64,000 nucleotides of DNA from Sphaerodactylus townsendi (Eukaryota): positions 73,098,001 to 73,162,000 of the forward strand of contig NC_059425.1 in the NCBI RefSeq assembly GCF_021028975.2. The letters run 5' to 3'. This document shows positions 47,460-63,551 of this stretch, piece after piece. Made by a program: the position numbers and the translations under genes. Numbering within the stretch: the first letter of the stretch is position 1; each line of letters begins with the position of its first letter. The notes beneath the pieces are model-generated. The model searched no databases and was not told where the DNA came from. It saw only the letters and a list, made by a program, of their open reading frames with translations.

Positions 47460-48090
47460 GGTTCAATTTTTAACCTGGCGGGGGAAGCGGGGCCTCAAAA
47501 GTTGGAAGTGGTCCGGGGAAACATTGTGTTTGAACGACAGGCATGGGAGGAGGATCACCTCTTGTACTGCATCTGTCACAGTCCCACCATCCTCTGCGGC
47601 CAGAGGGATCGCTTCTGCAGTCTCGAATCCGCGGTTCCCCAGTTCCGCCCACAGCTAAGATGGCAGCGGCGGCCAAGCGGTCCGCGAGGCATGTTCTCCG
47701 GTGCTGGCACGGTGGTGCGTGCCTTGCTCGCTCTGCTGCTTCCTTCTCCGCTGCGCGGGTGCGACAGACTTTCCTTCAGTTCTTCCAGGAGCGGTATGGG
47801 CATGAAGTGGTGCCCTCGGCCCCTGTGCGACCGCGGGGAGACCCCAGCCTGCACTTCGTCAACGCTGGCATGAACCAGGTACGACCCTGAGAAGGAGGTG
47901 GCCGGCCTGGGTTGAGAGGCACCCTTGGAAAGGTTCCTGCACAGATACTGATCGGTCCCTGACTTTTCCTGATTTATGGATTTCGATGCTGCACCGTTTC
48001 ACGTGCTGCCTCCTAAAGAGAGGTGCCCAGCCGCTGTTTGCAAACTCGCCGAAATCCAAATTCAAACAGGCAATCCTCCAGCCGGGGTGG
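47460..48090 (+). promoter_or_regulatory. AARS2: CpG island and promoter of AARS2
   Basis: CpG-rich region around exon 1; aagATGGcagcggc start context. Confidence 0.72.
47660..47878 (+). CDS. AARS2: AARS2 exon 1: Arg/Ala-rich mitochondrial presequence plus AlaRS motif 1 (VRQTFLQFF...[23 protein letters not shown])
   Basis: AlaRS signature NAGMNQ; N-terminal transit-peptide-like extension distinguishes it from cytosolic AARS1; CAG|gtacga donor; 219 nt. Confidence 0.95.
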
Positions 48091-48389
48091 GGAGGATGTA
48101 TTAAGACAAAATTATTTTTTAAAAAAATAGGACGCCCAATGCATTTAAATTTAAAATCTGAACAGGGGCAGTTTTTAAAGAACTTTCCCGGGTCCTTTCT
48201 CGAGCGAGCGTCTATCAAAACCGTGAATTCCACTCCTAAGATGGAAGATTTTAAAATAAAATACACGAGAGCCCATTTGATTTTTATTTTGCTGTAATAA
48301 GCCATCAGCAGCAACTTGAGATTTACCTTTTCTTGTGTAGAAAGGACCATTCAGATTGTGGAGCATCACATGTCCTGTGTGTGCCGTTG

Positions 48390-48832
48390 CCTGAGTGCTG
48401 AGGGGGGTGGGGGTGTCTGCTGGGCGTCTCTTGCCTTCCCCCTCTAAAGTGAGGAGGGGAGAGGCTGCACAGAGGGACTTCTTTGCGATAGCCCATTGTG
48501 GAATGCCCCTCCCATTAGAGGTCCAACAGGCACCAACACTATACACCTTTCAGTGCCTGGTTAAGACCATCATTTTTGCCTGGGCATTTGACTGATTGAT
48601 ACCATCTACCTCAAACCACTGGACTTATTTGGAACTTGCCCTCTACCTGCACCTGGGGAGAGGGGGGTTAGAGAGCGGGTGGTTAATTGCTTTTAGGTAT
48701 GATTTTAGGAATTTTTATCTGGTTATGATGGTGTTTTTTGGTGATGCGAAATCACTTTTAGATTGTTGTAACCTGCCCTAGGGTGTATTTGAAGGGAAGG
48801 ATAGAAATCAAATAAATAAACAAACAAATAAG
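48390..48832 (+). mobile_element. L2 3' tail
   Basis: Similar to the other L2 tails; ends in aaataaataaacaaacaaataa. Confidence 0.65.
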
Positions 48833-48852
48833 AATGCCAAAAACATTGGAAA

Positions 48853-49055
48853 TGCCCTGACTTAGATGTCCAAGGATAGCCAAAACTTGCCAGAGGTCAA
48901 AAGGTAAGCAGGGTCAGCCCTTGTTTATATTTGTGATGGGAGTGCAGGGTTGCTTTGGAGAGGCAGACAAGGGCAAACCAGTTCTGTTCATCTCTTGCCT
49001 TGAAAACCCTATGAGGTTGCCATAAGTCGATTTCAGCTTGATGACCCTTTCACGC
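48853..49055 (+). mobile_element. Degraded 5S-derived SINE
   Basis: taagcagggtcagccct..gtt..atttg..atggga head; same tail as the 36388 copy. Confidence 0.55.
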
Positions 49056-49239
49056 TAAATGCTTGGGAATTTCAAAACTGTATGGAATCCTTTGAGAAAG
49101 TCTCCATACAATACTTTGACAAATTAGTAGGTAGAGTATAACTTTAGATGCTGGGTTGTAAAATGGTTTGTTTTAAGTTTAGCAATCATTAAGAATTTGA
49201 TTGAGGCAAGCTTCTTCATTATGAATGTTAATGTTCAGA

Positions 49240-49253
49240 GCGCCATCTAGTGA
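49240..49253 (-). promoter_or_regulatory. CTCF-like motif TCACTAGATGGCGC in AARS2 intron 1
   Basis: One mismatch to the CCACTAGATGGCGC consensus variant. Confidence 0.45.
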
Positions 49254-49465
49254 ATCAAGACCCTTTTCTCTTTAATTAACCAAAGCAAAACAAAGTAAGC
49301 TACAGTTTCTATCTACAGATTGAGTCTCACACAATACTCACGGCTTACTCCCTGTTCAGATCAGGACTATTACAATAATAGTTTTATATGCTGGGCAGTA
49401 CTACAGTCCTCATCAGACCTCTGTGGAATGTGAAATTTGTTGGGTGTTCCTTTTAAACTTTGCAG

Positions 49466-60642: not shown

Positions 60643-60803
60643 AAAGCTGGTATGAATTGTTTCAGGGAGTTCCTCCATGGCACATTAGGGATCTATCTCT
60701 TAGACTTCTGGATTGATTGTGAGGACTTCATGGAGCACACCAGGCACTTGGAGGCCACAGCTACACCACAAGAGACCTGGCTATTCTCTTTTAATGCTCT
60801 CCG
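60643..60803 (+). CDS. RGS22-like gene, exon E, RGS-domain helices (KAGMNCFREFLHGTLGIYLLDFWIDCEDF...FNALR)
   Basis: RGS signature GxxxFxxFL...LxFWxxCExF; resembles RGS22 FKKFIKGTLG..W; long pyrimidine tract acceptor, CG|gtaacc donor; absent from the ORF track. Confidence 0.88.
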
Positions 60804-62094
60804 GTAACCATGCAAATGAATTTATTGAGCTAAGTATAGGATCCAGTGGGTCACTTAGTTTGCATTGCCCATTTCTCAGTCACTCCGGAATGATGAAGTA
60901 CCTGTCAAATCACTGTGTTACAGACTGCTAATTGCCTTTTGCCAGTATGCTGTGTTTATAAAAACAACACCGTACATCAGGAAAAGCAGCATAAAATATG
61001 TGAATTAGTTCGTTTGTTTGCATAATTTCTTCTATTGCTTCTAATCTAGAGGAGGGGCATAAAGCTGATGAAACCATTAGAAGCCAGCTGTTTGACTGCC
61101 AAAAATGGATCTCTTTACTGTCCCATTGCTGTCCCATTTGCTGTCAAGCCATTATGTCCATCGTCACTTTCTTAATAGCCTCAAAACTGTTCTTTGAATG
61201 AATGCTGACTTTCTCAGGATGATGAATTTTCTGGCCAGTTTCTGCAGAATTGTGCTTTGAAATAATTTATCCTCTGAGAAGACGCTTACACAGAAGTCAT
61301 TAGGGCAGTGATGATTAAATGTATTCTCTCAGCATGTCTGAAGTTTATAGAACATTTGACCAGATGAGCATGTTTTGGTCACACTCTTTCCCACAAGGCA
61401 AAAGGGGCCCATAAGGAGACTTTGCTATACACTTGCACAGCCCAAAGTACTATGTCAATTCTGTTGTACAATTTGAATCTCCTTTTTTTTCTTGAAAAAG
61501 CTCTCCTGAACTTCAAGTGTAGCACCAAACTGAGAATCATCACAATGTTTATCTGTGCTATGAAATGTAAGGAACACACAGATCCAGGGATTTATGCTTG
61601 TGATGCACCTCGGGTCTAGACTACCCTGATGTAACCACAAAACTGCCTATTGTTAAGTTTAGCCCAACATGAACACAAATATTTTGGCTGCAGTTTTTCA
61701 TAACCAGTGTGGGAATGTAAGAGCAGTAGCTGCAGAGGGAGAGACCAAGCATGTTCTATTTTTCCCTGTTATTTTGTAGCATGGCAGACTTTTCATAATA
61801 CCATTGTACTCTTCCCTATCTACAATTATTTTTGCCTGGTTTTGGAGTAGAATAAAATTGCATATCTTCGCAATTTCTTTCCCCTAATTTAGACATTTTC
61901 TAAAAGAGGGCCAGATATGATACAAGTTTGGAGCAAAGGTTGGTTGGAGGGCTTCAGTTTCTGCTACTGAGTGAGCTCTGTTGTAGAGTGAGCATGATCG
62001 GTAGCCTTTAGCTGCAAAATCTGACAAGCTTGAGATTAGACCTTTGGCTGTTCCAGTTCATTTTGGAGTTGAGGATACTGTTTTTCATTGGCAG

Positions 62095-62140
62095 GAGCAT
62101 TCAGGCCAAGTACAAGTTGACCGTGCCTCCTGCTTCTCAA
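62095..62140 (+). CDS. RGS22-like gene, exon F (SIQAKYKLTVPPASQ)
   Basis: tttttcattggcag acceptor, CAA|gtgagt donor; phase 2 to 0; IxxKY fits the RGS helix pattern. Confidence 0.8.
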
Positions 62141-62539
62141 GTGAGTAATGCTGGGCAGGTGCCCCTTCCTTAACCTGAGACACAGAACGTTAGCACTAAA
62201 TCCTTGATCTCTCTGGGGAAATTGATGCTGCTGCAAGCTAAGCAGCTCAGAAAACAGAATCTTGGGGACTAACCTTTTCCTACCACTTTTGTCCTTGCTG
62301 AACTAACTGGAGGCAAAATCCAGGAGTATGTTAATTCCAGCAACAAAGCTTCCAACAGACTGCCTCTTTGTACTGTTTCTAAGCTCATGATTTTGCCTAC
62401 CTTGTGACTGTGATATCAAAATAGTCCTCATTATTGCTAGAGAAATGTTTGCTTTCCCCTCTGTATTACCTTGAAATAGAGAATTCTGGGGTTGGCAGAC
62501 CACTGCTTGATAGAAATTGTCTAACGACTGCAAAAGACA

Positions 62540-62660
62540 GGCTGTTGTGGGTTTTCTAGGCTGTGTGGCTCCTAGGAGCTAAAACCACCAGAGCATAGCC
62601 ACACAGCCCAGAAACCCACAATGGCAGTTGATTGTGGCTGTGAAAGCCTTTGACAACTAC
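62540..62660. mobile_element. Internally deleted Penelope-like inverted-repeat remnant
   Basis: ttgtgggttttctaggctgtgtggc / gccacacagcccagaaacccacaa; same family as 5594-6070. Confidence 0.6.
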
Positions 62661-63411
62661 AATAAAATATACAATATATAATCTGAAGAAAGAAAAATAA
62701 CACTGATACCTTGAAAAATTTATGGGGAGAGGTAATTTTGGACTGGGTTTTTATTAAGTTCAAATGAGGAAAGAACTGTGGAAAATAAAATGTATTGTTT
62801 AGATTCCTCATTGTCAAATAATTATTTAAATAAATATTGATTTTATATAGATTTTGTATTGATGGCCTCAAGCAGAAATATAAACATTTCCATTTACAGT
62901 TGGAGGCAAAATAGTCAAGACAGGCTAAATCTATGGACTGAAAGTGTGTAAAGGCTTCAGTTAGGTTTGTAATGTGAAGAGCTATATTGGCAAGAGCCTT
63001 CACTTACTGTTGTGCCACTATCTGTGCTTTTTCTCCTGTGTGTACAAGAATCAGACACTGCAGTGGGTCACAGGTGATTTAAGCCTTACTTGTATGTGTC
63101 AATGCTATGAAGTCCCATTTATATGGATCCCCCAAAGGCCTGGTTCCTGCTGCTTTCTGTTTGAAGGCTTCCCACTACGTGGCTCCTCAATGTTCAGCAT
63201 GCCCATGAGCAACACTGAATACGCCCCCCCCCCCCCCCACCTCCAGTGGCATGCTCTGTGCCGAAAATAATTCAGGACTAGATAGGTGGAAGACTATCTG
63301 GACTTGTTCAGTGTGAAAGCAACCAGGGAAGGGATGGCAGTTGGTACTTGTAAAGCCAGTCAAAGTTTCTGTTTCTATAATGTTGCAGCCTTGCTGTTCC
63401 TCTGCTTGCAG

Positions 63412-63551
63412 GAGCCATTTGGTGAACCTGCAGGCACTCAGGAGACAGCTTTTGTTGCCCTGAGCAGGAAACAATATGATGCTTTGAGACGCTTGCGCTC
63501 TTACTGGGTCCCTCGGTTTCTCATCCACCATCAGAGGACACAGCATCTCAG
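63412..63551 (+). CDS. RGS22-like gene, exon G (EPFGEPAGTQETAFVALSRKQYDALRRLRSYWVPRFLIHHQRTQHL); gene continues beyond the right end
   Basis: cttgcag acceptor, AG|gtttgt donor; YWVPRFL resembles RGS22 YWAPRF and the end of an RGS domain. Confidence 0.87.

What the first reader, a model, noticed from the sequence alone, without database searches (positions are those of the whole stretch)
47660..63551. AARS2 exons 1-3 read in frame into a headless RGS22-like gene: candidate chimeric gene
Seen: AARS2 stops after exon 3; I find no exon 4 (expected FWEMGxTGPCGPCxEIH) in the following 12.8 kb. Seven same-strand RGS22-like exons follow instead. AARS2 exon 3 ends in phase 2 (GG|gt) and exon A begins in phase 2 (ag|G ACA), giving ...WLSLG-TVFYLEYKLAKLL... 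and a stop-free spliced ORF of 1541 nt (at least 513 codons) to the last exon seen. Known: exons 1-3 encode the mitochondrial presequence and AlaRS motifs 1-2 but not motif 3 or the tRNA-recognition and editing domains. Inference: one of (a) a fusion gene sending an RGS-like protein to mitochondria under a housekeeping promoter, (b) a same-strand gene nested in a large AARS2 intron sharing its 5' exons, or (c) a mis-join. A phase match alone has roughly a one-in-three chance, so it is suggestive only. AARS2 is essential, so an intact copy must exist somewhere.
Basis: partly seen in the sequence, partly recalled or inferred. Interest (0 to 1): 0.88.

Follow-up and report, generated by a model that had tools for sequence, protein, structure and literature searches.

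The report
Flipped assembly block splits AARS2, RGS22-like
The apparent AARS2–RGS22-like fusion gene is most likely a block of over 45 kb placed backwards in the Sphaerodactylus townsendi reference assembly, which cuts two neighbouring genes inside introns of the same phase, so it is an assembly error to flag and not new biology.

Summary
AARS2 exons 1-3 and seven RGS22-like exons lie on the + strand, all with AG/GT splice sites. Their phases fit, no exon has a stop in frame, and they total 1541 nt. No AARS2 exon 4 and no RGS22-like N-terminal "head" is in the window.

The fusion reading does not hold. The window is S. townsendi CM037614.2. In that assembly the rest of AARS2 (a 779-aa gene call) lies on the opposite strand, 2.1 kb past the RGS22-like stop codon. 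In four other squamates a complete RGS22-like gene, head included, sits tail to tail with a complete AARS2 of 984-1018 aa. Flipping one block (RGS22-like exon A to end, plus AARS2 end to exon 4) restores both genes.

The near breakpoint is a roughly 10^5-copy palindromic MITE at 51780-51927 that lacks a target-site duplication. No short-read contig from two S. townsendi individuals bridges 51802-52155. A contig from a closely related species leaves the assembly exactly at the MITE edge.

AARS2 is essential and looks single-copy, and both halves are intact. The assembly pipeline (Supernova, ARCS, about 3x ONT gap closing, 3D-DNA) is prone to such errors. I put mis-orientation at about 0.85 and a real MITE-mediated inversion at about 0.07. 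No RNA runs were available, and I could not reach the far breakpoint.

The parts
47660..47878 (+). AARS2 exon 1 (start codon, presequence, start of the catalytic domain)
   Evidence: ATG at the start and a GT donor; Pfam tRNA-synt_2c positions 2-40
49466..49654 (+). AARS2 exon 2
   Evidence: AG/GT sites; tRNA-synt_2c positions 41-99, E 4e-31
51057..51202 (+). AARS2 exon 3, ends in phase 2
   Evidence: AG/GT sites; tRNA-synt_2c positions 100-138. The 185-aa annotated product P0097 ends at the TAA just after this donor.
51203..51779 (+). Start of AARS2 intron 3, mostly single-copy (one diverged repeat at about 51304-51437); left flank of the breakpoint
   Evidence: Contigs at depth 23-34 from two S. 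townsendi individuals cover it and stop at 51801. The related species' contig matches up to 51779 and then runs on elsewhere. It has no homology to the E. macularius RGS22-like locus.
51780..51927 (.). 148-bp palindromic hAT-like MITE without a target-site duplication; near breakpoint
   Evidence: Its flanks are GTATAGTG and CCTTAGAC (3 of 8 match), while the copy at 5413-5560 has a perfect 8-bp duplication, GTGTAGAA. Summed contig depth is about 3 million.
51928..52155 (.). Repeat-only stretch that no short-read contig bridges
   Evidence: Only contigs of 73-151 nt from other repeat copies lie here. At 51989, 51991 and 52086 no contig of the two S. townsendi runs carries the assembly's letter, and few or none in the other two runs.
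52349..53575 (+). 3' part of the RGS22-like intron that precedes exon A
   Evidence: Collinear with E. macularius L002:19796-21488 at 72-81% identity. Unique contigs start at 52156.
53576..53802 (+). RGS22-like exon A, begins in phase 2
   Evidence: tblastn 77-79% identity to P0001 and P0002. In orthologs it follows a head exon ending ...FLPFQR.
55746..55886 (+). RGS22-like exon B
57644..57761 (+). RGS22-like exon C; holds the ATG (57652) where the annotated 914-aa product starts
   Evidence: P0033 is identical from here on
59010..59163 (+). RGS22-like exon D
60643..60803 (+). RGS22-like exon E (start of an RGS domain)
   Evidence: Pfam RGS E 1.8e-4, below the curated cut-off because only part of the domain is in this exon; representative search
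62095..62140 (+). RGS22-like exon F
63412..63551 (+). RGS22-like exon G; the gene runs on past the window

Best explanation
A block of more than 45 kb is oriented backwards in the S. townsendi reference assembly (MPM_Stown, CM037614.2). It carries RGS22-like exon A to the last exon and, tail to tail with it, AARS2 from its last exon back to exon 4. One edge of the block lies in AARS2 intron 3, inside a very abundant palindromic MITE. The other edge should lie in the RGS22-like intron between the head and exon A. In the animal, AARS2 and the RGS22-like gene are most likely both intact and convergent, as in other squamates. The stop-free reading from AARS2 exon 3 into exon A arises because both cut introns are phase 2. 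Shown here: the inverted layout relative to four squamates, the position of the near breakpoint, and the lack of any read-based bridge across it. Inferred: that the flip happened in the computer and not in the chromosome.
For: The window is this assembly: L001 overlaps it over 16,349 nt with 0 mismatches. The gene calls are a 185-aa AARS2 piece (+), a 914-aa RGS22-like product (+), and a 779-aa AARS2 piece on the minus strand 2.1 kb after the RGS22-like stop. The last AARS2 exon is at L001:41945-42103. In Eublepharis, Podarcis, Hemicordylus and Crotalus the RGS22-like gene is followed tail to tail by a full AARS2 of 984-1018 aa. Inside the block, order and orientation match Eublepharis and Podarcis. 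Head exons lie 1.3-2.8 kb upstream of exon A in the two control lizards but are absent from 97.4 kb here. Window 52349-53890 is homologous to the Eublepharis head/exon-A intron plus exon A, and 51203-51779 is not. The MITE at 51780-51927 has no target-site duplication, unlike the copy at 5413-5560. Unique contigs of two S. townsendi individuals end at 51801 and restart at 52156, and no listed contig bridges the gap. A 3146-nt contig from the related species matches 51491-51779 and then continues 2855 nt into sequence not on the stretch. Both flanks have single-copy-like depth, 23 vs 17 and 34 vs 26. The assembly was built with Supernova linked reads, ARCS, TGS-GapCloser using 6.6 Gb of ONT reads, and two rounds of 3D-DNA. 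From established knowledge: AARS2 is an essential single-copy gene, and here both halves keep intact reading frames and splice sites.
Against: There is no N gap at the junction, nor anywhere in L001, so a simple scaffold-orientation error would need a later gap closure through repeats. A hybrid MITE without a target-site duplication is equally what real recombination between two inverted MITE copies would leave. Logan contigs cannot bridge a repeat this abundant whichever arrangement is true. I did not see the far breakpoint. No RNA run could be laid.
Confidence: 0.85

Rival explanations
1. A real inversion in S. townsendi, fixed or heterozygous in the reference male, caused by recombination between two inverted copies of the MITE. 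It would create reciprocal in-frame chimeras: AARS2 exons 1-3 joined to the RGS22-like body, and the RGS22-like head joined to AARS2 exons 4 to end.
For: The sequence is gap-free across the join. The MITE lacks a target-site duplication. The MITE is absent at this site in the related species, so the event could be recent. Both cut introns are phase 2.
Against: It would break an essential gene that looks single-copy (depth), yet both halves remain intact. No read-derived contig supports the join. The assembly method is error-prone at this scale. Another first-stage note reports a probably mis-oriented segment elsewhere in this assembly (unchecked).
Confidence: 0.07
2. A functional fusion gene that sends an RGS-like protein to mitochondria from the AARS2 promoter.
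For: Only the conceptual 1541-nt stop-free reading with canonical splice sites.
Against: It needs the real inversion above and, in addition, a second source of AARS2. The annotation calls separate 185-aa and 914-aa products. About 85 full-length family members found by search show no AlaRS part, and every squamate, turtle and snake sequence read in full has its own head or is simply truncated at the N-terminus. The AARS2 part would be a truncated catalytic domain without motif 3.
Confidence: 0.02
3. A partial duplication of the AARS2 5' end (promoter plus exons 1-3) inserted upstream of the RGS22-like gene, with an intact AARS2 elsewhere. Or an RGS22-like gene nested in a long AARS2 intron 3.
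For: AARS2 stops after exon 3 in the window.
Against: The only other AARS2 piece seen nearby lacks exactly exons 1-3 (779 aa against about 984) and lies on the opposite strand, so the RGS22-like gene cannot be nested within one AARS2 transcription unit. Depth of the exon-3 flank is about 1.3 times that of the exon-A flank, not 2 times. The RGS22-like head is missing, which a simple insertion would not explain.
Confidence: 0.03

Closest known systems
Local inversion (mis-orientation) errors in linked-read and Hi-C scaffolded assemblies
   Same: The block's internal order is intact. Flipping it restores conserved synteny and two complete genes. The near breakpoint lies in a high-copy repeat, and the pipeline used Supernova, ARCS and 3D-DNA.
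   Different: No N gap marks the join, which implies a closure through repeats (TGS-GapCloser) or an error inside a contig. I could not inspect the far edge.
Inversions caused by recombination between inverted transposon copies
   Same: A hybrid element without a matching target-site duplication sits exactly at the breakpoint.
   Different: A real event would disrupt an essential tRNA synthetase gene. No read evidence for the join exists in the data I could lay.
Vertebrate AARS2 (mitochondrial alanyl-tRNA synthetase)
   Same: Exons 1-3 match tRNA-synt_2c positions 2-138. The minus-strand 779-aa piece carries tRNA-synt_2c and tRNA_SAD and a typical C-terminus.
   Different: In this assembly the gene is split across two strands. 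Other squamates encode 984-1018 aa in one gene.
RGS22 / RGS22-like proteins
   Same: They share an RGS domain (PF00615) and a long multi-exon architecture. A few sources name orthologs 'RGS22'.
   Different: This is a distinct family of about 1100-1165 aa, mostly labelled 'uncharacterized LOC', found in squamates, turtles, crocodilians, ostrich and amphibians. It shares only about 30% identity over about a third of its length with invertebrate RGS22-like proteins.

Membership tests
AARS2 / class II AlaRS (Pfam tRNA-synt_2c) | N-terminal catalytic-domain sequence | tested here: met
   The three exons hit PF01411 at positions 2-40, 41-99 and 100-138, with E 5e-11, 4e-31 and 4e-8.
AARS2 / class II AlaRS (Pfam tRNA-synt_2c) | Complete gene in one transcription unit (motif 3, tRNA-recognition and editing domains downstream on the same strand) | tested here: not met
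   No exon 4 in the window. The remainder is a 779-aa call on the opposite strand.
RGS22-like vertebrate family (LOC125424650 orthologs) | Exon-by-exon homology to full-length orthologs, including the RGS domain | tested here: met
   Seven exons match at 50-80% identity, and P0033 (S. townsendi) is identical from exon C on.
RGS22-like vertebrate family (LOC125424650 orthologs) | Conserved head of about 105 aa encoded 1-3 kb upstream of exon A | tested here: not met
   The head profile finds nothing in 97.4 kb here. The positive controls in L002 and L003 score E 1e-31 to 2e-10.
Chimeric (fusion) gene | Transcripts spanning the 51202^53576 junction | not testable with these tools
   No RNA run was listed for this stretch. 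No transcript-derived protein fragments from this genus turned up.
Chimeric (fusion) gene | The DNA join confirmed by independent reads | tested here: not met
   None of the contigs listed for the four runs bridges 51802-52155.
Assembly mis-orientation | Flipping the block restores the ancestral order and both genes | tested here: met
   Tail-to-tail RGS22-like and AARS2 in four squamates. The same adjacency holds inside the block here.
Assembly mis-orientation | Raw long reads or Hi-C contradict the assembled join; the reciprocal signature is present at the far edge | not testable with these tools
   The far edge lies beyond L001. The only runs available were Logan contigs.

The most novel reading that the evidence does not exclude
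The inversion is real in S. townsendi: recombination between MITE copies split the essential AARS2 gene onto two strands and produced two reciprocal in-frame chimeras. Viability would then need trans-splicing, another AlaRS source for mitochondria, or the inversion carried as a heterozygous lethal allele in the reference male.
Probability: 0.06. Interest if true: 0.85.

Novelty: not a real feature. Interest (0 to 1): 0.12.

Why it matters
As biology it most likely does not matter. Its practical value is as a precisely located error in a chromosome-level gecko reference, around CM037614.2:73,149,780. The error breaks three annotated gene models: AARS2-like 185 aa, LOC125424650 914 aa, and AARS2 779 aa. 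It could mislead studies of gene loss, gene fusion or synteny. It also shows how a very abundant palindromic MITE can hide an orientation error without leaving an N gap. If the inversion were real, it would be a rare case of an essential vertebrate gene split across two strands.

Tried and rejected
- **Exon 4 and head searches:** Motif and profile searches found neither AARS2 exon 4 nor the RGS22-like head in the window or in L001.
- **RNA evidence:** The look-up of sequencing runs listed no RNA run, so the splice junction could not be tested.
- **Transcript fragments:** Protein searches with the exon-3 and exon-A stretches, each by reference, found only the annotated 185-aa product and genomic fragments from other species. 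No Sphaerodactylus transcript fragment appeared.
- **Far breakpoint:** I could not obtain the 779-aa AARS2 product as an id. The length window of the protein search excludes it for single-exon queries, and I did not hand in joined exons. So the locus beyond L001 was not fetched.
- **Fold-back chimera at the palindrome:** I tested whether the join is a fold-back. Inverted similarity does not extend beyond the MITE flanks, so I rejected this.
- **Ortholog look-ups:** P0027, P0004 and P0034 were not on record.
- The joined spliced model was not searched. Exons were checked and searched one at a time by reference. The N run at 37701-37881 was left untouched.
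Full report
**Observation.** The three AARS2 exons are real. They lie at 47660-47878, 49466-49654 and 51057-51202, with canonical AG/GT sites, and they match Pfam tRNA-synt_2c positions 2-138 of 552. 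Exon 3 ends GG|gt, which is phase 2. None of the six frames of the window holds an exon-4 motif.

Homologs found with one exon by reference let me map seven RGS22-like exons by tblastn and splice sites. They are A 53576-53802, B 55746-55886, C 57644-57761, D 59010-59163, E 60643-60803, F 62095-62140 and G 63412-63551. Checked exon by exon, none has an in-frame stop. I did not search the joined spliced model. All searches used single exons by reference.

**Identity of the locus.** P0033 (uncharacterized protein LOC125424650, Sphaerodactylus townsendi, 914 aa) is identical to exons C-G and starts at the ATG in exon C. Its locus L001 (GCA_021028975.2, CM037614.2:73,145,652-73,195,463) overlaps the window over 16,349 nt without a mismatch. 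The window is therefore CM037614.2:73,098,001-73,162,000.

**The head really is missing.** Orthologs in squamates, turtles, crocodilians and amphibians are about 1100-1165 aa. Before exon A they carry a conserved head of about 105 aa that ends ...FLPFQR. In Eublepharis and Podarcis the head exons lie 1.3-2.8 kb upstream of exon A, and the intron between them is phase 2 (AG|G). A profile of the head finds those exons in both species at E of 1e-31 to 2e-10. It finds nothing in the 97.4 kb of S. townsendi sequence I held.

**Where the rest of AARS2 is.** The annotation on this assembly has three coding regions:
- a 185-aa AARS2 piece, exons 1-3 read through to the TAA just after the exon-3 donor, named 'alanine--tRNA ligase, mitochondrial-like';
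- the 914-aa RGS22-like product;
- a 779-aa product with tRNA-synt_2c and tRNA_SAD on the minus strand, starting 2.1 kb beyond the RGS22-like stop codon.

The last AARS2 exon, with a typical C-terminus, is at L001:41945-42103 on the minus strand. A full AARS2 of 984 aa minus the 185 aa of exons 1-3 leaves about 799 aa. The 779-aa piece is therefore about the size expected for exons 4 to the end.

**Ancestral layout.** In Eublepharis macularius, Podarcis lilfordi, Hemicordylus capensis and Crotalus adamanteus, a complete RGS22-like gene is followed tail to tail by a complete AARS2 of 984-1018 aa on the other strand. The S. townsendi region around the two 3' ends is collinear with Eublepharis and Podarcis. 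The assembly therefore differs from the ancestral order by one inversion. The inverted block runs from RGS22-like exon A to that gene's end, then from the AARS2 end back to exon 4. It is more than 45 kb, with breakpoints in AARS2 intron 3 and in the RGS22-like head/exon-A intron. Both introns are phase 2, so the in-frame reading follows automatically.

**Near breakpoint.**
- Window 52349-53890 is homologous to the Eublepharis head/exon-A intron plus exon A. Window 51203-51779 is not.
- Between them lies a 148-bp palindromic hAT-like MITE at 51780-51927. Its flanks, GTATAGTG and CCTTAGAC, do not form a target-site duplication. The copy at 5413-5560 has a perfect 8-bp duplication. This confirms an earlier first-stage note (s1-743304).
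- I laid Logan contigs of four DNA runs on 50500-54499. Unique contigs from two S. townsendi individuals end at 51801 and restart at 52156. Only short contigs from other repeat copies lie between.
- Summed depth over the MITE is about 3 million. At 51989, 51991 and 52086 no contig of the two S. townsendi runs carries the assembly's letter, and few or none in the other two runs.
- A 3146-nt contig from a closely related species matches 51491-51779, which is exactly up to the MITE edge. It then continues 2855 nt into sequence that is not on the stretch. That species' contig for the exon-A side starts separately at 52262.
- Depths of the two flanks (23 vs 17 and 34 vs 26) look single-copy, so there is no sign that AARS2 exons 1-3 are duplicated.
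- A fold-back at the palindrome was tested and rejected.

**Real or artefact.** This step is inferred, not shown. The assembly was built from Supernova linked reads, Tigmint/ARCS, TGS-GapCloser with 6.6 Gb of ONT reads (about 3x coverage), polishing and two rounds of 3D-DNA. That workflow can mis-orient blocks of this size and can close gaps through repeats.

A real inversion would split an essential, apparently single-copy gene, yet both halves are intact. Against the artefact reading, there is no N gap at the join. A hybrid MITE is also what real recombination would leave, and contigs cannot bridge such a repeat under either arrangement. I put mis-orientation at about 0.85, a real inversion at about 0.07, and a functional fusion gene at about 0.02. 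The nested-gene reading is refuted.

**Limits.** No RNA run was available. Protein searches with the exon-3 and exon-A stretches found no transcript fragments from this genus. The far breakpoint lies beyond L001 and could not be fetched. The N run at 37701-37881 was left alone.

Noticed in passing
window:27150-43500 (-) and window:8500-13374 (-): RNF8 exons (FHA domain at 40182-40541 and 33508-34299; RING at 27150-27566 and 29950-30354) and the CMTR1 N-terminus (13048-13374, 8537-8917) lie upstream on the minus strand. RNF8 and AARS2 are therefore head to head about 4 kb apart. Identified by eye from ORF translations only.
   Followed up: no
window:5413-5560; L001:36017-36178 and 38772-38853: Further copies of the 148-bp palindromic hAT-like MITE. 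The first has a perfect 8-bp target-site duplication (GTGTAGAA). Contig depth implies roughly 10^5 copies in Sphaerodactylus genomes.
   Followed up: partly
window:52221-52340: A GC-rich repeat with summed contig depth of 2,500-9,700 in all runs. In other genomic copies it is often joined directly to the MITE end (joints 51927>52221 and 51857>52221).
   Followed up: no
window:53576-55886: The annotated CDS of LOC125424650 starts at the ATG in exon C (57652). Exons A and B are conserved coding exons in orthologs but are left out of the annotated protein, probably because the head is missing upstream.
   Followed up: partly
protein family of P0004/P0022-P0033: The RGS22-like family has full-length members in squamates, turtles, crocodilians, ostrich and amphibians, plus distant invertebrate RGS22-like proteins. 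No mammalian protein was among the 85 hits, which may mean loss in mammals or may reflect a limit of the search.
   Followed up: no
window:37701-37881: A run of 181 N inside an RNF8 intron.
   Followed up: no
window:51113-51114: The related species' contig differs at two adjacent bases in AARS2 exon 3. One change is synonymous (Lys) and the other is Asp>Asn.
   Followed up: no
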